Shown: in pieces, positions 1-51,700 of the stretch
Position numbering within the stretch: position 1 is the stretch's first letter
How the letters are laid out: each line of letters starts with the position of its first letter
NCBI GenBank assembly: GCA_021613535.1
Contig: CP075495.1
Location: forward strand, 9,238,001 to 9,302,000
Source of the DNA: Adineta vaga
Lineage: Eukaryota; Animalia; Rotifera
Reading direction: 5' to 3'
Length of the DNA stretch: 64,000 bases
Made by a program: the position numbers and the translations under genes
The notes under the pieces: generated by a model
The model's input: only the letters and a program-made list of their open reading frames with translations
Databases searched by the model: none
Told to the model about the DNA's origin: nothing

Positions 1-3000
1 ATACAACGACATTTGATATCCTAGAAAAACACGGATCTAACAATAGCACATGCGAATTGGAATGTACTCGTGATGAAGTTGATTTTATTCAGCGTCATTT
101 AGGAGAATTAGTCACTCGCGATCATCGATCAATATGGTTTACTTATAAAGCAAAACCAACTGATGAACCATCGGAAAATAATCGAAACTATTTTCCAAGA
201 CCTTTGCCACATAAATCATGGACAGCATTGTATAATTTCGGTGCAATGCTTTCTTATGATATATTTATTGATCATATCAAAAATAATCGATCTCCAGTTT
301 CAATTAAAATAGATAGGGATATACGTGGACGACCAAAAAGTCTTATTTTGCAAACAAAACATACCGAATATCGAATGATATTTGATTTTAATTCGTTTCA
401 TACCGATATACTTGTTAAATATGGTGAAGAAAAGAAAAATGAATCTGTTCAAATTGTATTTATGCTTCAAGGATTACCAGAAATTCAGCGAAAATCTAAT
501 GATGGAAGTTATATCAGGTAAAATAAATATGTTTTCATAGCTGTGCTACTGGTGCATACAATTTACAATCTTGGAAATTCACATGCCAATATTAATATAT
601 TTAGAATATGTCATAAGTCAAATCAGAATATTCCGGTCGAAACTATCTCTGAATGTTCAGATTTGTGGCTACAGTTTGATCATTCTTCGGATGCAATCGA
701 ATTTCTTCAACAATTTTCTACTAATAGTAGCATCAAATCTTTTGTTATAAATTATGCTGATTTTCAAAATGTGCCATCTTCACATTACAATCAGTTACAA
801 TCACCACGATTTAATACCCATGCTTCATCCGATTTGGCTCATTATGCTATAGAAATGCTTCGCTCTCTTGGCTATCTATTTTTAGATAAATATCTTATTT
901 ATGAAAAATTTCAACACATACTCAATTTAGATCGTGAACAATCGCCGAAGGATTTCTATGAACTATGTTTTAAGTTGTGGGATAAACTTAAAAAGAACCA
1001 CTGTTATTCGTTGGAAGATATCTTTAATGATGACGACAAAAGCAACCGTAAATTATCCAAGACTCGATATCAAATTCCACACTTTATTATCACTCCACTA
1101 CGCAACTTAATTCAACCAATGCATGAAACAATTGGTCATCGAGCTATGCGACAGTATACGAGTGAGAAAGGATTTCAATGGATGCTTGTTTATATTCGAG
1201 ATGAAGATGGTTTGAAAAAGATCAATGATATTAATAATAATCGTGAACTTAGAGAACGATATAAGAATCTTTTGCAAGAAGGTATATGTTTAGGATCATA
1301 TTCATTTGAACAACTAACATATTATTACTTTGGTTCATCGGGAAGTCAAATGAAAAAGCAAGAATTCTGGTTTATGTCACCAGTGAACGAAAGTGCAACG
1401 AATGCTGCATCTAAAGTTAATGAAGCTCGTACAATATTAGGTGATTTGAAGAAAATTCGAAATGTTGCAACCTATATTGCTCGAGTTGGCCTTTATTTGA
1501 GCAGTTCAAAATCAACAGATGTAAGCATAAAATACGATTGTCAACAGTTTTACAAGAAGTATTTCTACAGATACAATTAAAATATAATGATGAACCTTGT
1601 TGGTGGCAATTTCTATTAAATAATTTTGCTCCAAAATGGGTGAAATTTTCATCCGATCAAACAAAATATCCAGCTCATCTAATTGAAGATATCGAATGTA
1701 ATGGATATTGTTTTACCGATGGTGTAGGTCTCATATCATTAGGTTTGGCGCGAAAAGTCGCTACATCTATTGGGATTCGTTTTAGTAAAAACGTCTGTTC
1801 ATCTTTCTAATCAAATATGACTTATCAATTCCTAAATTTTATATAGGATGATATTCCATCTGCATATCAAATTCGTCTTGCTGGATGTAAAGGAATGCTT
1901 TCAATCGATCCTCGGTCAACATGCAATGATTATTATGTCAAAATTCGAAAGAGTATGAAGAAATTTGATAATGATGATTGGACATTGGATGTTGTTGATC
2001 ATTCTCGCTTAAGTAAGTCAATAGATAAACTTGCATCATTTATACCGTCATCAAATTATAGTGTGTTTAAGTTTAAATAATCAAATTATCCGTCTCTTAT
2101 ATGATCTTAATAATAAAAATAAAGCTGTCTTTGAATCATTACAAAATCGATGTGTCTTACATGATCAATGGCATCCACCAGAAGAAAGATATTACAATAT
2201 TTTTGATTCACAAGATACCGATCGAATTAATGATGAAAAGAGACGACGAAAATATTTGAATGCGTAAGTCTAATAGGTTTTTTTCCTCTCTGCTTCATAT
2301 TCTTTATTTATATACCTATTTTATGTAGAAAAGATTTTTTATGTCGTAATCGAATTCCATTACCTGTCGATGAAGCTCGTTATCTATTTGGTATTGCAGA
2401 TGAAACGAATTCATTGAAGGAAGGTCAATGTTTTATTCAATATCAAAAAATGAATAGAAAAACTTATGAAGTTGTAACAGGTAAATGAATCGACTACAAC
2501 TTACAGATAGATCTTTGTTCTATGTCCAAATCCTACCATTTACACAAATTGATTCTAATCACTATTATTGACACCATGATTATTTTTCTTTTGTATAGGT
2601 GAAGTTTTAGTAACGAAAAATCCATGTCTTTATCCAGGTGATATTCGTCGGCTGCAAGCTGTCGATATTCCAGCACTTCGACCATTTATTCGAGATTGTA
2701 TTGTATTTCCTGTTAGAGGTTCACGACCACACTCTAATGAAATCTCGGGATCGGATCTTGACGGGGATCAATACTGGGTATATTGGGGCAAAGATCTTAC
2801 TATTAATGAAATCATACCACCTTTATCTTATACGCCAGCGACAAAGAAAACAGTGCCGAGCGTAACACCTGATGTAATTGTCAATCATATTTTGGATACA
2901 ATGGATAATCAAACAACGGGAATTATTAGTAATACACATTCAGTTATAGCTGATAGAGCAGTAGATGGAACGAAATCTACCGATTGTAAGTTTTTGGCCG

Positions 3001-3437
3001 ACGTTTTTGCTCGAGCAATTGATTCTATTAAAACTGGCGAAGAAATTCATATGAAAAAAGTTCTGGAGCTACGAGAAAAGTGGTGTAAGGAATATCCATC
3101 GTGGATGATGAAAAACAATAAACCTAAATACAAAAGTGAATCGATCAATGGATACTTATTTGAAAAAGTTCAAAACTTACGAATTGAAGGACGTGCTTAT
3201 AAAAATATACACAAAAAGTATGATAGAATCAATGCAGAGACAAGAATAGATATGGAAAGAGAAAATGGTAATGATGATACGAATGAGCAACGATCTCTAA
3301 TATATATAACAAGATTTATATCGAATACATTGCACAGGATGTCACGAATTCATTTTCATCGTCAGTTTCTGTTTCTAAAACTTTCATTGGCTTTTTTACT
3401 TATATTTATATTTGTACTGTATTCTCTTATAGAATAA
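1..3437 (+). CDS. Cellular (RNAi-type) RNA-dependent RNA polymerase, 5' end outside the window; exons approx. <3-517, 605-1520, 1571-1792, 1847-2013, 2062-2263, 2329-2480, 2599-3437
   Basis: Phase-consistent GT-AG splicing gives the RdRP motifs in order: YYFGSSGSQMK, ARVGLYLSSS, FTDGVGLIS, PSAYQIRLAGCKGML, LNNQIIRLL, LFGIADET..LKEGQCFIQ, KNPCLYPGDIR, and IVFPVRGSRPHSNEISGSDLDGDQYWVYW (catalytic DLDGD at 2754-2768). Confidence 0.96.
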
Positions 3438-3783
3438 ATATACGAAAACTCAAATTAATTATTTACCCAGTTGCTCAACATTGGACAGGTTGGTTCAATC
3501 AAGACTAAGACACATATTTTAGCGTAGATAGCAAACATTGTTCTTTGGAATTCATTCTGAAAGATGCTTTTCTCCATCATTTCGAGTTTCTTTCTGATAT
3601 TACGATAGTAGCTCAAGTTAACCTCTAAAATGATCATTGATATATTTTACTCTATGTACCTCTTCCTTTTCTATGCATGTACTTTTTCGTTATCAATCAA
3701 TTACAAAATACTTCCGTTACTCTCATATCTAAATAAATAATTTATTTTCTACAAAATTAGTGTGAAAAAAATTCCAATGGTAC

Positions 3784-4233
3784 TTAACAAATACAAGTTT
3801 TGTTTTCATAATAAACATGCAATGCATAGGCACTGACAAAAAAGATGCTACTACCTGCTGAAAGAATGATACGAATAGGCAAATTCAAATTTTGATCATT
3901 ATAAGTTAATTGTAAATAGAAAAACGTAAACATCAAAAGAAATATTATACAAACAATAAGAAAATGACGATAAATTTGACAATGCTGAGCAATTTTTTTT
4001 AAACATTTATATGTTAAAAGAAAACCCAAACAGAAATAAATAATACAATCATATGGTATATAATAATTTCTACCCATATATGGATCTTTACTTAAAATAT
4101 TTCCAATTGATAATAGAAATGCAATTGTAATTAATATAATATCAAAACAAACGATATAATTAATAAAATTCACAAATGGTGATAGGAGATTATTACATGA
4201 TCGATGACTTCTATTCGTATGATTAGAAGCCAT
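3784..4233 (-). CDS. Hypothetical 149-aa membrane protein with about 4 hydrophobic segments, single exon
   Basis: ATG-started stop-free 450-nt ORF in very AT-rich DNA, with a polar N-terminus and four ~20-aa hydrophobic stretches. No family recognised. Confidence 0.5.
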   Translation of the reverse strand: MASNHTNRSHRSCNNLLSPFVNFINYIVCFDIILITIAFLLSIGNILSKDPYMGRNYYIPYDCIIYFCLGFLLTYKCLKKIAQHCQIYRHFLIVCIIFLLMFTFFYLQLTYNDQNLNLPIRIILSAGSSIFFVSAYALHVYYENKTCIC

Positions 4234-26022: not shown

Positions 26023-29000
26023 TCAAAAATTCGATTGTAAACGTTTAGAAACACCGCCAACACCTTCACTAACCGATGGAGTTGCAACATTTGTAATATC
26101 ATAGGACATTTGGAGATTTCGATTGATAGATGAACGAAGAGGTTTCTTAGTTATTATCGATGAAGAAATTGATTGTTTAGTGGTCGAGATTGGTGAAGAT
26201 GATGGAGGATCCTTAGGAGATTTTGTTTGAAATGGACTAACTTTTGCAGTAGGACGTTTATGATGATGATTTATATCCGATGTTGAATGTTGAGAAGTGT
26301 TCGTTAGAATAGGACGATGATTGGAGACATTATTATTTTCATTGTAAGAATGAGATGAGGGCTGTGGAGGTGGAGGTGGAACTGGCGGTAGTGGTGGTGG
26401 CGGTGCTGCTGCTGCTGCAGAATTGCTAGAATTTGTTGAACCATCATAAAATCGAGCTGAGCCAACTGTATAAGTCGAAAGTGGCTAAAATCACAAAAAA
26501 AATGCATTGTTAATAATGTTTTCAAAAGAATCCATTCTTACTCGATGTGTACGTTCATTGGCTTTCGGTGAAGTACACCGTGCTTCAATAGTTGTTCCAC
26601 TTAAATAAATTGCTGCTGCTGCTGCAGATGGGGAGACAGGTGCTGTTGTACCAGTAATACCATTATTTGCTGCTTTAATTATACCTCGAATAGGTCCTGT
26701 GCCAGTGAGCGCACCACAAATTGATCGTGCATCTCCTTTTTCAATACGTTTGACCGTTGTCGATGATTTTATTTGTACATCATTGTGTCGAAGTACAGTC
26801 GTTTGTTTTTCTTTTGAATTATCACTAAGTAATTCATCGAGAAAAGTAACCGATTTTGAACGTTTCTTTTGTAGCGTTAAATTTGATGCCGTGAGAGATT
26901 GATTGTGAATTTGGGTATCTTGTCTTGATGCAATTTCTGCTTGAAGTTCAGAACGTATTTCATCCAGTGTTACTGTTGGTGCTTTCATATGTGTTTCATT
27001 CGATAATTTACCCATACGAGATGAATGTTGATTATTATTATGATTATTATTATCATTAACAGTAGTAGTAATAGAATTAGTTGTTGGAATTTCATCATGA
27101 ATAATATGATCATAGATATGTGCATCTTCATTTAATTTTACATTTAAATGATTACTTTCATCATCATCGTCGTCACTCATCATTAATAAACGTTTAGTTT
27201 TCAATTCTTGAGCTGCATCATTAAGCATCTTTTTATTCCATTTTTTTCTTCGTTGTTCAGTTTGTTGTTTTTCAGCTTCAGTATCACTTGCAAAATCTTT
27301 TTCAATTTTTCGACGAAATAAACGAAAACGATGATGTGATGATTTATTGCTCGTTTTATTTAAACTTGTAGCTGTTTGAGTCGAACAATTGGAATCAATC
27401 GATGTTGTATCATCATCACCTGTATAACTCAATAGAAGATTACCAGTTTTCTTTGCTTCATGACGTGCTTTGATGCTACGCAGTGTTTTTTTCGTTTTTG
27501 TATCGATGATATTAGATGGATTTGTTTCTTGAATAAATTCATTGGTTGTCGATTCAGTATTTAAACGTTCAAGAGATTTATTTGATCGTGTTAAACGATT
27601 AATTGTTGAACGAAAAAAATTCGCTGGTGCAGCTTTTGATGGAATTACTGGTGCTGGAATTTGATTTTCATCATCATCGAATGAATCTTCATCGGTATTA
27701 TCATTAGAGTTCAGAGTTTTTTCTATCTTCGCATTATCATCAACAACTAAATCATCATCAAATGAATCATAATCAACTGACGGATCTTGCTGAGATGGAA
27801 CGGGAACATTCGCTACAGCATAGAGTGATTCAGGACGGGATGGCACATTTTGCTTATTATTATCATTTGCCGAAGAAATACTCGATGTTTTACTTGTATA
27901 TGAATTAGAATTACTACTATTGGTAAATGCAAGTCCATTTTCATTAGAATAAATATGTTGATCATCTTGATGAGGTAGATTCATATAATTAGGTTCAGAA
28001 AGAGTAGTAGTCGGTGTTGTTGACGAAACAACAGGTGAAGGTTCAATAATAGCTGTTGGTTTTCGAAATGGTTTAGGTATACCATTACAGATGGGACCTG
28101 CTGGTTGTTTAAGTGTAAAGTCAAGTGTTTGAGATAAAGAAGGTTTCGATTCGACGGATGCAGAAGGATGTTGTAGTTCAAGATTTTGATAAACAAGTGT
28201 TGTTGATGATTGTTTAGTTGTAGTTGTAGTTGAAATTGTTTTTTCAGGTTCCTGAGCGTTTTTAGATGTAAATGGAAGAAAAACACCAACTGGCCGTCGT
28301 ATGGATGGTGGTGTAGTTGAAGCAGGTCTTAAGAAGAAAAAAGAAAGAATCATTTGCAATTGACTGAAATATCGGATGTGTATCTTACTTAGACATTGAA
28401 GATTGATCTTGTGGAATTTTTGGTGCCTGTTGAGATTTTGATCGTTGATTTGTAATAGTTAATGGTGTACGTGAAGAAGATGAAGATAAACGAGTACTAC
28501 TGTTCGATTTATATAATTTATCTAATAGCGATCCTGTTGCTTGTGACATTGAAGATGTTGTCAATTGTTCACGAATAAGATCAACAGTTGTTAAACCAGC
28601 GGATGGTGCATCTTGTGGACGATTAGTTTCATCAAATACTATACCAACTCGATCAATACATTCAGATAAATTCTTCATTGTTACACCAACATCAGGTTGT
28701 TTACTACTTCTTTGAGAATAAAGACTAATACGATCTGCTGTCATCATCGACTGTATTGGTTTGGATTTATTTGTTTGATAGGAAAAGTTAGGAACTGTTG
28801 TTATGGTAGTTGTTGTTGTTGTTGTTGGAAGTGCTGGTCGAGATGGTCGTTGAGAATTATACGAAGAATTTTTTGATAAGAGACTTGGCGATTTTGATGG
28901 AATAATAAATGAACGAGATGGACTAATCGGTGATTTAATAAGATCAATGTGATGTGATGATAAAGGTCGTTCATGATTTTTAATGACTTCTGTATAGATC

Positions 29001-29053
29001 ACTTCACTATCAGTAGACGGTAACTTTGTTGGTGGAGGTGGTCGCGGTGGTGG

Positions 29054-29088
<35 letters not shown>

Positions 29089-32000
29089 TTGAAGATGAAT
29101 TTGAAGTGCTTTCCGATAATACAGATGATTGTTCTATATGTGTCTCAGCTGGTGGTATTCGCGTAGTAGAATGATTGAGGGTAACAGCTGTGTTAGTAGT
29201 GGTGGTAGCGGTAGTAGTCGTGGTCACGCGTTCTTCCAAACGATTTTCAACCGATAATGATGACGATAGACGAGGAGAATTATTCTTCATTGCACTCATA
29301 ACAGTTCGTTGTTCATGATGAATTTCAATAGGAATCATTGAAGGTGAAGATATACTGTTCGCAGTTGTTTTTATTATTCGCTCATCGGTACGACGTTCAA
29401 TAGTTGATTTCGGTATTTGTGAAGTATTGCTCACTGGAGTAGGTAGAACAGATCGTTGATCATGATGTTGTACTTCAAATGACGAAGGTGAACGAATAAT
29501 ATCATCTGCTCGCTTGTCAATAGAGGTTTCTATTGGGGGTGGTGGTGGAACCGGTGGCGGTGATGTGATATAAATTTTCTAAAACAAGATAAAAAATCAT
29601 TGACTATTTACTTTCTCATCTAGTTGATGAACACATACTTTCGGTGAAATGATATCATCCAGACATGTCGCTTTCGTAGAATTTCCTGTTTGACGTGTTG
29701 TATTAGGAATAGAAACGGGTGGACGATGTGTTTGTATTTGTTTTTGTTGTTGCTGCTTAGAAGGTTTCGGTTCTTGTATTGATGTCTCGGATGATTGTTC
29801 AAAAAATGGTTTAATACGTTGAACTAAACTACCATTAACTGTTGTTATAACAGGTTCACTCTCTATATTTGTCGTTTTAGCCAAGGATAAACGTGGTTTT
29901 GGTTGTGGTTTAAAATCATTTCTATACGATAATTAATAATAAATCTTATCATACATCATGGAATCATGTCATTCAGATGTTACATACCTAGTTGGTTCAA
30001 TAGTGGTCATCATCGCAGTGGTTAATGGACGTGTTCCGTTATGTAGTACACCAGTAATAACAGTAGATGATGATGATGGTGTTACCGTTGGAGAATGATG
30101 CCGTCGTTGTACTACAGTTGGTTGACGTATATTATTATTCGATCGTATCGATGGTTGAACAGTAGTAGTAGTAGTAGCATTAGTTGTGTTCGTAGTTGAA
30201 GCTAAGAAAGAAAAAGAGAAAGAAAAAGAATGAACATTATTATAATGCACGTTCGTGTATTTGTCTCTTCAACTCTCTTTCTCTCTTTCTGCATCAAATT
30301 TTACCTATGTGAACGTGTGTGTCTACTAGTAGTGTCCCGTTATTGTTTGCTTGCGTATTATGTGACGACGAAGACGACGACGACGACGAAAGAGATTCAA
30401 TATGAATTTTACCATTGACCTGTTTCGTACTGGGATTGAGTGGTTGTTGTTGATGTTGTACTTGTGTAGGACCATGTTGAATACCAATTGAAGATTGATG
30501 AAGATGTTGATGAGACAATAAAGAACAATTTTCATCGTTTCTCTCAACACTTCCATTAATAGTCATTGTATTCAATAGGATTTGATAACTATTTGTTGAA
30601 TAGACAGAGTTTGGTCTATTTGGACGTTGACGAATGATTAGCGAACTGAAAGAAAAGAATGAGACAAATCGTAGCATTGTTTGCATTCGATGTTTTCTTT
30701 CTATTTGAACTGTATATACCTAAATTGATTTGCGCCTGCTTGATGAATATTAACACCTTTCGTTGATAAACATGTTCTTGCTTCATTAAACTCTTCTTCA
30801 TCTTCAAATGTTAATAACGTTGGTCTTTGTCTAGTAAGCATTGATTTTAATAGGTCTTTATTTAATGACTAGATATGTATGAGAAAAGAAGAAGAAAAAC
30901 ATCGAAGTAATTAATATTATTTAAATGAGAAAAAAATAGATCGATTCGTTATAAATATAAAGTTATTTACCGAAAATAGATACGTTGCGTTAAGATAAAC
31001 AAGAAGATCAGCTTCTGATCGTTGTAGACGTTTTTTTTCAGATTTATCAAGTAAATGACCTTTACCAGTTGTTGTTATAATCAATCTGTCAGGTCTATTG
31101 TAATGGACAAATGTCGAAGTGAAAAAAAAATAAAACAATGAATAGTCATTTACATACTTGAGTTTTGCATGTGGTATAGATGACTGGTCAGTGTCGTCTT
31201 GATCATCATCGCCAATCACAATAAGTAGTTCAACACCCTATATATAGACAGACATATATATATATATGTATATATACATGCATTCCCTTTTGCTTATATG
31301 CATATTTTATTGATCGAGATGATCGATAATCTTATATTTTGCCTGACTGCCTACTCCTCTATGTGTGTCTAATCGTATGTGCATGAACGACACGATGGGC
31401 TAAAACAACAGACGGACTGCAAGCAATGATTTTTATCGTATTGCACGCACATAATGTCGGTTGTAAGCATTTGGCGATCATTTATTGAGTTATGTGAAAG
31501 GAAAAAAAAAGATAGATAATGTTTTTGTCAATACTCCTTCTTACGACGATTACGACATTCTTCTTTCGCAATTAAAATGATCTTTTCAAATTGTTACCCA
31601 CCTAAATACATACGCCTATCATCAACAATTGACATAGACATAGTATAGTCTACACAGATAGTCATTTTTCACCTCTCCAATTTTTTTTGTCGATGAATTA
31701 TGTAATCATTGTACGACTAAGTCAATATAACGACAAGTGCTCTCGTTTTCTCTATCTTGACTTTACTTACTTTATTATCAGGAAACATATTGAGTAGTTC
31801 ATGAAAACGAGTGGGTAGATTTGACGATGATTGGTCGTTACCAACAAGATCAATTTTATTAAAACCATTAAGAATATGAATAACAATTGGACGAAAATTT
31901 GGTCGAAGGCCAAAAGAAATGATAGCCTTGCCGATAGTAAGAACATGAGTTAACAGATCTGTTACTGCCGCCAAAAGACCATCTACTGCATCTAGATAAA

Positions 32001-48776: not shown

Positions 48777-51700
48777 ATGTCAACGGGTAATCAGCAACCA
48801 CAAGTATTAAATAAGAAACAACGACGTAAACTTGCTCGAGGAAGTAATTCACAACCAAGTCAACAGCATGATAATGGTGATGAAGAAGTCAATGAAACTC
48901 AAGGAAATATACCGGTTCAGACACTACCTCAGCAGGAAATCAATGTACCTTTGACCGCTGAAAATGTACAAGAGTCTAACTCAAATACCACTATCAAACA
49001 AGTTGAGGATGTATGTTAATTTTCAAGTGAAAAGTTTTCAGAAATATTTTATTCTTACTATAGCCTATTTTAACAACGACCCTTGAGTCTGACATAACAG
49101 CAAATGGAATAGTAACAGTGATGATATCAGAAAATCTTGAGAACAACAATGGGACTTCTAATGAAGATATAGAACCGTGTTCACCTCGTCCAACACCACC
49201 GACACTACGACGCCGAAATAAACGCTTTCCAATAACATCTGCGATTCCATTATTACCCCCAGTCGAACAGAAACATGGACCTCCAAAAAAGCCAAGCCCT
49301 GGTAAAATTGGTACAGTGATAGAAGTTTTTACGAATCATTTTCCTGTTAAATTGGCACCCAATTTAATGCTTTATCAATATGATGTTTTGGTAGAAAGGA
49401 TGAGTTTTCAATCAACAAGCGGTTGGGAAGAAGCGATGAGTCGTGATCAACGTCGACGATTTGTACAAGAATTAGCTGAGAATAAAGTATTGAATTTTAT
49501 ATATTGGTAAGAGACTACGTGTTTCTTTTCTATAAGAAAAACATATTGCATTAAATTATATTTTCAAAATTTTAAAGGTATGACGAAGGTAAATGCCTTT
49601 ACACCACTCAAAAACTACCATCACGTCAATGTCCAATGATTTGCACTTTGCCAAAAAGTGATCACACTAAGCTTCGATTCTGTATCATTAACTTAGCTGG
49701 TCAATGGTCGACATCAACAATATTCGATTATCTTCGTACACCTGAGAACAATGTTCCATTGAGTGCTATTCGTATTCTTGAAACATTACTAAAGCAAGCT
49801 CTTCTACCGATGACACATTGTGAGGGTTCATTATTTTATCGAAATCGACAAGAACCAGACCAAAGTTTGCCAGATGGTTTTGAACTACGTTTAGGATTTT
49901 TTCAAGCATTACATTTAACACAAGCAGGACTAACACTCAATTTACAAACGACATTAACTAAATTTTATCCTCATATGGATATACTTGAGTTTTTGGAAAT
50001 TAATCTAAGAAAAGATATTCGAAAACATGGTATGACAAATAGTGATTATGATAAAGCTAGACAAGTATTAAATGGTTGTAAAATCACTACGAGACAATCC
50101 AATTATACTCAGGTATACGAGTGAAAATAAAGAATCGATATTTTTTAATTATCCCGTGATTCTTTTTCTCTTACTCAGATTTATCGGATCGGAAGTCTCT
50201 CGGACATTCCCGAACGACAAGTTTTCACATTTGTAAAAGAAACCACTGCTAATGATCAACAAATTCGTTCAGAAATTCAATATAATCTTATACAATACTA
50301 TGACAAGGAGAAAAATATTCAACTTAAATATCCCAAACTACGATGTTTACGATGTTATTTCTTACATGAACGACACGATCCAAAAGATTTACCAATGGAA
50401 TTATGTCGAATTCTTCAATGGCAAGAATGTGAACGTGAAGTAAGTACTTTATACAGTTAGATCATTAAACGACTACTCACAATTATAGTCAGCTAACGAA
50501 CAACGTGATCGTCAAAATCTTTCTATTCCATCCCCTGATCAACGTTATCGAGATATAATGTCATCACTTCGATCATGTACTTATACAGCACCACCAACAT
50601 TACCACTCTGTCAAGCTGTTCAATTAACTGTTGATGATCATGAAATGAAGTTAATCAAAGCACGTATTCTTCCACCACCTGTAGTTAATAATAATCAGGC
50701 AGACATCAATATGGGTCGTATTAATTTACGAGGAAAATTTTTTGAACCTTATAAATTGAAATCCGTTGCATTCGTTTATTTTGGTCCACCGCCACCGCCA
50801 TTATCTGCACAGAGAAAGGCTTTGATGGACAAATTTGTTGATTCATTTCATAAGGTGATACAATCAAATGCCTAAAAATTATCGATTTTTAATTCTTTTC
50901 ATTTCTAGATAGCTAATCAATTTCGTTTAGGACCTATTCAAACAAATAAAAAAGATATTGTTTGGATATCAGAGAATGAACTAGATCGGGAAGGAAATTT
51001 GAAACGTGTGGAGAAATGTTTTCAAACAAGAAAAGAACAGAATTGTGAATTAATGGTTTGTATTATGGATAGTAATTGGAATGAATTAAGACCCACAATT
51101 AAAATGAATGGAACAGTTCATTTCGGTATTGATCATTTCGTTATTTACTATTCATTTCTATTTTCATTTTGATATATGTATTCATTACAGGTATCACTAC
51201 TCAATGTCTTCTTTATTCGAAACTTCAGGAACAAATGGATAGATTTTCTCGTTCACAACGTGGTAGTCCTGATCGTATTTTGGATAATATGTGTGAAAAT
51301 TTATTAAGAAAAGTCAATTTTAAAATGCAAGGAATCAACACACAAGTTAATTTACCATTTACAACCACAAAAGGAAATGTTGCATCAGCACATACGAAAA
51401 AAATTGAAGATGCATGGCAATTTATGGGTGCAGATGTAATTCATCCTGTCTGTCGACAAGATAAACCATCAATTGCTGCTGTCGTTGGTTCAGGTGATGC
51501 ATTATGTTCAACTAGTGCCGTTCGTATTTGTAAACAATGGCCAAGAAATGGTAAATGTGCTATTGAAGCTGTTGTCGATCTACAACAGATGGTAACAGAA
51601 TTACTTGAATATTATCAAGCAGGAAATGATCGATTACCAAACAAAATTGTCTTCTATAGAGATGGTAAACAATAAATTTTATTAAAAGCAAAAAAAAGAT

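What the first reader, a model, noticed from the sequence alone, without database searches (positions are those of the whole stretch)
3340..3437. RdRP ends in a tail-anchor-like helix that coincides exactly with a potential in-frame 72-nt intron
Seen: the RdRP frame ends HRMSRIHFHRQ-FLFLKLSLAFLLIFIFVLYSLIE*, a basic patch plus ~22 hydrophobic residues at the extreme C-terminus. Also seen: 3361-3432 begins GTCAGT and ends TCTCTTATAG. Splicing it removes 24 codons and gives ...HFHQ* using the same stop codon (3435-3437). Known: characterised cellular RdRPs (QDE-1, plant RDRs, nematode EGO-1/RRF) are not described as having TM anchors. Inference: this is a membrane-tethered RdRP, or a splice switch between soluble and anchored forms. 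It could also be just a T-rich intron that reads as hydrophobic by chance.
Basis: partly seen in the sequence, partly recalled or inferred. Interest (0 to 1): 0.85.

Follow-up and report, generated by a model that had tools for sequence, protein, structure and literature searches.

The report
Membrane-anchored RNAi polymerase of rotifers
Bdelloid rotifers have a family of RNA-silencing polymerases that have lost the usual end domain and finish in a conserved membrane-anchor helix, so these animals probably copy silencing RNA on an organelle surface, which I found described for no other cell's own enzyme of this kind.

Summary
The hydrophobic tail is real coding sequence, shared across a family; the 72-nt 'intron' is most likely chance. 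The gene is an intact bdelloid cellular RdRP (PF05183, DLDGD). A hydrophobic C-terminal helix 200-239 aa after DxDGD is found in 34 of 40 rows of its clade (Adineta, Rotaria, environmental; down to ~40% identity) and in one Didymodactylos RdRP. It is absent from 58 other bdelloid paralogues and from all but 1 of 229 other RdRP hits. Tails show second-codon-position T (p=1e-4) and AATAAA just after the stop (10/12). The GT..AG pair is not conserved: 7/12 homologous loci have none, and none has it at the same site. Two low-depth RNA contigs read 3 and 7 nt past the donor unspliced; no junction was seen, but coverage is thin. A model of the A. steineri orthologue matches RDR2 and QDE-1 only up to the neck: the head domain is replaced by a linker plus anchor. 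Membrane location and activity are inferred, not tested. A rare splice switch specific to this species is not excluded (~8%). I found no paper on this. The scan's first stage noted a Cys-type paralogue on another piece of this genome (s1-505306).

The parts
3..517 (+). RdRP coding exon (gene starts upstream of the window); N-terminal region
   Evidence: no stop in frame; tblastn to A. steineri and A. ricciae orthologues
605..1520 (+). RdRP exon; start of PF05183
1571..1792 (+). RdRP exon with the FTDG motif
1847..2012 (+). RdRP exon with the QIR..G.KG motif (skipped by the public model P0080)
   Evidence: RNA joint 2012>2062
2062..2263 (+). RdRP exon (skipped by the public model P0080)
   Evidence: RNA joint
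2329..2480 (+). RdRP exon
   Evidence: RNA joint skipping 118 nt GT..AG
2599..3437 (+). Last exon: catalytic barrel, bridge helix, trigger loop, neck, linker and tail anchor
   Evidence: PF05183 E=1.4e-52; match to RDR2 779-966
2754..2768 (+). Catalytic DLDGD motif, intact
3207..3281 (+). Low-confidence acidic linker, in place of the head domain
   Evidence: pLDDT under 50 at exon residues 203-227; orthologue aligns to RDR2/QDE-1 only up to the neck
3297..3365 (+). Amphipathic helix and basic/His patch next to the anchor
   Evidence: hydrophobic moment 0.72; helix 229-277
3366..3431 (+). C-terminal hydrophobic helix (tail anchor); core after the Lys is 3381-3431
   Evidence: KD 2.61; summed insertion score -4.2; conserved in homologues
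3361..3432 (+). Intron-like 72-nt GT..AG overlapping the anchor; probably not used
   Evidence: not conserved; no junction, contigs run 3 and 7 nt past the donor
3433..3438 (+). AATAAA overlapping the stop codon (3435-3437); likely poly(A) signal
   Evidence: AATAAA within 50 nt of the stop in 10/12 homologous loci against 11% background

Best explanation
A catalytically intact, head-less cellular RdRP with a constitutive C-terminal tail anchor, one member of an old bdelloid subfamily. Shown: intact reading frame and catalytic motif, conserved hydrophobic last helix, absence of the head domain, transcription and splicing of the gene. Inferred: the helix inserts after translation into an organelle membrane with the polymerase facing the cytosol; the enzyme works as a monomer, as head-less QDE-1(377-1192) does in vitro; tethering, rather than the head, brings it to templates such as membrane-bound mRNAs, piRNA precursors or viral RNA on replication membranes, where it makes antisense RNA for small-RNA amplification. 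By mammalian targeting rules this copy (GRAVY ~2.6, tail charge -1) fits the ER best (my odds: ER 50%, mitochondria 25%, other 25%). The sister type, with a Cys cluster and a +1 to +3 tail, may go to a different membrane. The GT..AG pair is a by-product of T-rich Phe/Leu/Ile codons in an AT-rich genome.
For: Tail in 34/40 clade rows once genomic frames are read, in 0/58 other bdelloid paralogues and 1/229 other RdRP hits. Sequence diverges freely but frame, length (200-239 aa from DxDGD) and hydrophobicity hold. T at codon position 2 is enriched, 108/172/117, p=1e-4, and all 8 homologous tails checked frame by frame are stop-free in frame. AATAAA follows the stop in 10/12. No in-frame GT..AG in syntenic orthologues L001, L002, L008, L015. 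RNA contigs from X19 (has spliced joints) and X20 (has a poly(A) end) run to 3363 and 3367 with at most one unexplained mismatch, where the spliced form would differ at 3/3 and 5/7 bases. Orthologue model aligns to RDR2 at Z 43 up to residue 951 = RDR2 963, and to QDE-1 up to ~1176-1184. QDE-1 377-1192 is an active monomer (PMC9508822).
Against: No localisation, protein or activity data. No RNA contig spans the whole tail; the two that pass the donor are at depth 2.6-3.9, unstranded, and could be pre-mRNA. Splice-site scores are within the real range. Head truncations abolish silencing in plant RDR2/RDR6, so activity without a head is inferred from QDE-1 in vitro. Some type-A tails are short (15-17 residues). 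No dedicated TM predictor could be run. Three clade rows lack a tail (P0011, P0034, P0037) and P0244 was not checked.
Confidence: 0.8

Rival explanations
1. The anchor is ancestral, but this species' gene has also gained a used 72-nt intron, giving a regulated switch between anchored and soluble forms.
For: Donor 5.1 and acceptor 7.3 bits are within the real range; only 0.75% of synonymous recodings give a pair this strong. Removal is in frame and covers exactly the helix. Three public gene models of relatives splice out the tail (P0226, P0235, P0384).
Against: Sites are not conserved. The three models use different, non-homologous sites and disagree with sister models of the same species that keep the tail (P0392, P0390, P0383). 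No junction in four runs, and both contigs that reach the donor read through it. The terminal exon would begin with the AATAAA itself. The 0.75% figure is post hoc, since the finding was picked for this coincidence.
Confidence: 0.08
2. The helix is real and conserved but is not a membrane anchor: it packs on the enzyme or a partner, as a dimerisation or regulatory tail replacing the head.
For: QDE-1 uses its C-tail to regulate the partner's cleft (PMC9508822). A third bdelloid clade ends in an amphipathic, non-spanning helix.
Against: Uninterrupted 15-21 apolar residues with a favourable summed insertion score (-1.9 to -7.2 in types A and B), basic flanks and Cys clusters, and no conserved sequence face. 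This pattern is typical of lipid-facing helices, not of protein interfaces (established knowledge).
Confidence: 0.07
3. 3361-3432 is a constitutive intron and the hydrophobic reading is chance; the protein is soluble.
For: GT..AG, T-rich, within the length range of this gene's introns.
Against: Conserved tail in orthologues that cannot splice it; codon periodicity; 0/32 real introns read this hydrophobic; RNA read-through past the donor.
Confidence: 0.03
4. A membrane-bound but inactive scaffold or decoy, because loss of the head kills activity.
For: Head truncations abolish function in plant RDR2, MOP1 and RDR6.
Against: DLDGD and its surroundings are nearly invariant across the family. All bdelloid RdRPs sampled lack the head Pfam PF26253. 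Head-less QDE-1 is active.
Confidence: 0.02

Closest known systems
Plant RDR2/RDR1 and Neurospora QDE-1 (cellular two-barrel RdRPs, PF05183)
   Same: Fold from the N-terminal barrel through slab, two DPBBs, bridge helix, trigger loop and neck (Z 43 and 36); DLDGD.
   Different: No C-terminal head domain (alignment ends at RDR2 ~963-970 of 1133); a linker plus hydrophobic helix follows instead. 228 of 229 other RdRP hits have no such tail.
Bdelloid expanded RdRPs ('RDR I/II' of Nowell et al. 2021, PMC7943196)
   Same: Divergent bdelloid-specific RdRP expansion, about 39 copies per genome; proposed to amplify secondary piRNAs.
   Different: The paper's main text has no occurrence of 'membrane' or 'transmembrane'. 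I did not map this clade onto RDR I or II.
Hepatitis C virus NS5B
   Same: [quoted passage not shown]
   Different: Unrelated right-hand viral fold and viral function; analogy only, no homology.
Membrane-anchored piRNA factors Daedalus and Gasz
   Same: C-terminal transmembrane segment tethers small-RNA biogenesis to an organelle surface, there the mitochondrion (10.1101/608018).
   Different: They are scaffolds, not polymerases, and this tail lacks the basic end typical of mitochondrial anchors.
Plant RDR6/SGS3 siRNA bodies
   Same: RdRP-dependent siRNA production linked to endomembranes (PMC4193931).
   Different: The review describes membrane-associated bodies and partner proteins; no anchor in RDR6 itself is mentioned in the passages read.

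Membership tests
Cellular (eukaryotic) RdRP, PF05183 | PF05183 hit above the gathering cut-off | tested here: met
   179.7 bits against 23.8 for the last exon; 66.5 bits for exon 2
Cellular (eukaryotic) RdRP, PF05183 | DxDGD catalytic triad in a two-barrel fold | tested here: met
   DLDGD at 2754-2768; orthologue model against RDR2 Z 43, rmsd 2.7 A over 725 residues
Cellular (eukaryotic) RdRP, PF05183 | C-terminal head domain as in RDR2 and QDE-1 | tested here: not met
   Sequence and structure matches end at the neck; no PF26253 on bdelloid rows
Cellular (eukaryotic) RdRP, PF05183 | RNA-templated RNA synthesis | not testable with these tools
   needs an enzyme assay
Tail-anchored membrane protein | Single hydrophobic helix within ~30 residues of the C-terminus | tested here: met
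   KD 2.61, one residue from the end; no other hydrophobic stretch in P0080 or in orthologues
Tail-anchored membrane protein | No N-terminal signal peptide or other membrane span | tested here: inconclusive
   By hydropathy only: the best window of full-length orthologues is the tail; no signal-peptide predictor available; the N-terminus lies outside the window
Tail-anchored membrane protein | Integral membrane insertion, N-terminus in the cytosol | not testable with these tools
   needs fractionation, protease protection or imaging
Spliceosomal intron at 3361-3432 | GT..AG ends with scores like real introns | tested here: met
   5.1 and 7.3 bits, within range
Spliceosomal intron at 3361-3432 | Junction seen in RNA | tested here: inconclusive
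   No joint; two contigs read through the donor by 3 and 7 nt; none spans the segment; low depth
Spliceosomal intron at 3361-3432 | Conserved position in orthologues, as for the gene's other introns | tested here: not met
   Upstream introns recur with the same phases in A. steineri, Rotaria and Didymodactylos; this one recurs in none of 12 loci
Viral RdRP (NS5B-like) | Right-hand palm fold with GDD motif | tested here: not met
   Fold search returns only two-barrel polymerases at the top; the gene has spliceosomal introns

The most novel reading that the evidence does not exclude
Bdelloids run organelle-specific small-RNA amplification: paralogous head-less RdRPs carry different membrane addresses (neutral or acidic anchor; Cys-rich, possibly palmitoylated basic anchor; amphipathic helix) that place RNA copying on the ER, mitochondria or other membranes, in place of the ping-pong cycle that A. 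vaga reportedly lacks. In this species a retained-or-spliced 72-nt segment might also release a soluble form.
Probability: 0.3. Interest if true: 0.9.

Novelty: new variant of a known kind. Interest (0 to 1): 0.74.

Why it matters
Cellular RdRPs are known as soluble enzymes that reach their templates through partners, condensates or Pol IV. A built-in membrane anchor is the strategy of a viral replicase (HCV NS5B) and of piRNA scaffolds, and I found no report of it for a cell's own RNAi polymerase. The function of the ~39 bdelloid RdRPs is an open question (PMC7943196). The tails give a direct handle: tag or delete 25 residues and ask where the enzyme sits and which small RNAs depend on it. 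The family is also a natural test of what the head domain does, which the RDR2 structure paper calls unclear. In practice, gene predictors mis-splice these tails away, which hides the feature in databases.

Tried and rejected
Chance hydrophobic intron: rejected. Conserved splice switch: rejected; no homologous GT..AG. Tail-less homologues as counter-examples: four of five checked are model or assembly effects. P0226, P0235 and P0384 have the tail in the genomic frame and P0013 ends at an assembly gap. P0063 (R. sordida) is a degraded copy with a stop before a still-readable hydrophobic stretch. A search for full-length spliced transcripts among Logan and JGI proteins and loci gave none for bdelloids. 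The careful tree did not finish, so quick trees were used. A+B as one clade is not rejected (p-AU 0.50), and the tests that add Didymodactylos and the amphipathic clade did not finish. Literature searches for bdelloid RdRP plus transmembrane, cellular RdRP plus tail-anchored, and eukaryotic RdRP plus transmembrane domain found nothing relevant; most subscription papers are not covered. dN/dS on the tail was not computed: too few close DNA pairs. Exons were searched by reference, the public model P0080 was scored on its last-exon part only, and the full-length fold used the public A. steineri protein P0217.

Full report
Setting. The window is AT-rich DNA with short introns; the best homologues are from Adineta, Rotaria and Didymodactylos, so it is a bdelloid rotifer. 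The public protein identical to the last exon (P0080) lies on a 16,274,841-base record, which from memory is Adineta vaga chromosome 2; other scan notes also name A. vaga. The RdRP gene starts before base 1 and has seven exons in the window: 3-517, 605-1520, 1571-1792, 1847-2012, 2062-2263, 2329-2480 and 2599-3437. Checked exon by exon, phases match and there is no internal stop. Two introns are confirmed by RNA contig joints. The last exon hits PF05183 at E=1.4e-52 and holds an intact DLDGD. P0080 skips 1847-2263, which RNA joints and orthologues show to be coding.

The observation. Both parts are in the sequence. The frame ends in a basic/His patch and 22 mostly apolar residues (KD 2.61). 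3361-3432 is a 72-nt GT..AG whose donor (5.1 bits) and acceptor (7.3 bits) score within the range of 33 introns from these genes.

The tail is coding and conserved. Homologues align over 96-100% of the exon and end in a hydrophobic stretch 200-239 residues after DxDGD. In a tree of the catalytic segment alone, 40 rows form a group with 96% SH-aLRT support. Of these, 32 have the tail as annotated and 34 once genomic frames are read. None of the 44 long-type or 14 amphipathic-type bdelloid paralogues has it, and only 1 of 229 other RdRP hits passes the same test. There are two subtypes, each supported at 96-97%. Type A, this gene's type, has an amphipathic helix, a basic patch, then the apolar helix at the very end. 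Type B has an acidic linker, a Cys cluster, the helix and a +1 to +3 basic tail. One Didymodactylos RdRP has a weaker tail and an unresolved position. The tail sequences have little in common beyond hydrophobicity, as expected for lipid-facing helices. In 12 homologous loci T is enriched at codon position 2 (108/172/117, p=1e-4), and AATAAA lies within 50 nt of the stop in 10, against 11% background. In this gene AATAAA overlaps the stop codon. Real introns do not mimic this: none of 32 reads through to KD 1.5, and only 4 are stop-free.

The intron is probably chance. Orthologues L001, L002, L008 and L015 (each sharing a neighbouring gene with this locus or with other type A loci) have no in-frame GT..AG over the helix. 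Seven of 12 loci have no in-range pair, five have one at other places and lengths, and none matches this one. The gene's upstream introns, by contrast, recur with the same phases across genera. Synonymous recoding of this tail gives an in-range pair 13% of the time and one as strong 0.75% of the time. The second figure is post hoc, but it is why I leave 8% for a species-specific switch. RNA evidence is thin. No joint appears at 3360>3433 and no contig spans the segment. A contig from X19, a run with spliced joints, ends at 3363; one from X20, a run with a poly(A) end at 3712, ends at 3367. Both are laid in full with five differences, four of them listed upstream. The spliced form would differ at 3 of 3 and 5 of 7 of those bases, so both read through the donor. 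They are low-depth and unstranded.

Anatomy. The last exon matches Arabidopsis RDR2 residues 779-966 and no further. An AlphaFold model of the A. steineri orthologue P0217 (pLDDT 80.7) aligns to maize RDR2 at Z 43, rmsd 2.7 A, up to residue 951 = 963, and to QDE-1 up to about 1176-1184. Residues 950-1011 are low-confidence and the chain ends in a 23-residue helix. The window's own last exon shows the same low-confidence linker and final helix. So the head domain is missing, and a linker plus anchor stands in its place. QDE-1 cut at 1192 is a monomer that is still active, more so than a longer form (PMC9508822), so a head-less enzyme can work. In plants, head truncations abolish silencing and the head's function is called unclear (10.1101/2021.08.31.458351).

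How it most likely works (inferred). The protein is released from the ribosome, its tail inserts into an organelle membrane, and the polymerase faces the cytosol on a flexible tether of about 60 residues. There it copies RNAs that gather at that membrane into antisense RNA for small-RNA amplification. In mammals, high hydrophobicity with a neutral or acidic tail favours the ER, and positive tails favour mitochondria or peroxisomes (PMC5450235). This copy fits the ER pattern and type B the other, though Cys palmitoylation could redirect type B and the rules are untested in rotifers. Nowell et al. report about 39 RdRPs per bdelloid genome, divergent from other animal RdRPs, and suggest they amplify secondary piRNAs because A. 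vaga appears to lack ping-pong; their text never mentions membranes (PMC7943196). Precedents for the logic exist: HCV NS5B is a tail-anchored RdRP of unrelated fold, Daedalus and Gasz tether piRNA production to mitochondria, and RDR6 sits in endomembrane-linked siRNA bodies.

Verdict. It is a member of the cellular RdRP family by profile, catalytic motif and fold, with one family feature (the head) absent and one new feature (the tail anchor) conserved across bdelloid genera. New variant of a known kind. Confidence in a constitutive anchor 0.8; splice switch 0.08; non-membrane helix 0.07; constitutive intron 0.03; inactive scaffold 0.02. Interest 0.74: surprising, directly testable, not found in the literature searched, but with no localisation or activity data yet. 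A first-stage note on another piece of this genome (s1-505306) describes what appears to be a type B paralogue; I did not see that locus, but type B is shown here from other species.

Noticed in passing
P0316 cluster (Coffea eugenioides, arabica, canephora RDR1): A plant RDR1 cluster ends in a 20-residue hydrophobic helix after a full-length C-terminus (7 of 8 members; summed insertion score -2.7), the only such case among 229 other RdRP hits; possibly an independent gain of a tail anchor.
   Followed up: partly
P0026, P0027, P0028, P0031, P0032, P0056, P0232 (third bdelloid RdRP clade): Head-less RdRPs ending 186-205 aa after DxDGD in an amphipathic helix (moment 0.6-0.8) rather than a spanning one; may bind membrane or lipid-droplet surfaces.
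   Followed up: partly
P0037: Divergent clade member without a spanning helix that ends in CCQNL, a CaaX-like prenylation motif; single sequence.
   Followed up: no
window 3784-4233 (-): Intronless 149-aa hydrophobic protein with no Pfam hit, convergent with the RdRP, polyadenylated at 3712, and kept next to type A genes in nine loci at 53-72% identity.
   Followed up: partly
L002, L008, L009, L045, L047, L048, upstream of the RdRP: An LRR gene (tropomodulin-like LRR, ~517 aa) lies just upstream of type A RdRPs; Rotaria sp. Silwood1 models P0220/P0221 fuse it to the RdRP, probably a prediction artefact but not checked.
   Followed up: no
window 49636-51675 (+): Argonaute gene pieces (ArgoL1 and Piwi hits) about 46 kb from the RdRP; already noted by the scan as s1-505553.
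   Followed up: partly
window 1847-2263: The public model P0080 skips two real coding exons, including the QIR..G.KG motif; RNA joints and orthologues show they are used.
   Followed up: yes
L047 (Rotaria sordida), around 3710: The type A orthologue looks degraded: model lacks the full catalytic motif and has a stop before a still-readable hydrophobic tail.
   Followed up: partly
window 26491-29434 (-): Two long ORFs (622 and 349 aa) in a G-skewed, higher-GC stretch with no Pfam hit.
   Followed up: no
P0223-P0245 (long bdelloid RdRPs): These carry 470-700 residues after DxDGD with no Pfam hit in the one tested (P0237); a scan note (s1-483060) suggests a nucleotidyltransferase-like domain, untested here.
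   Followed up: no
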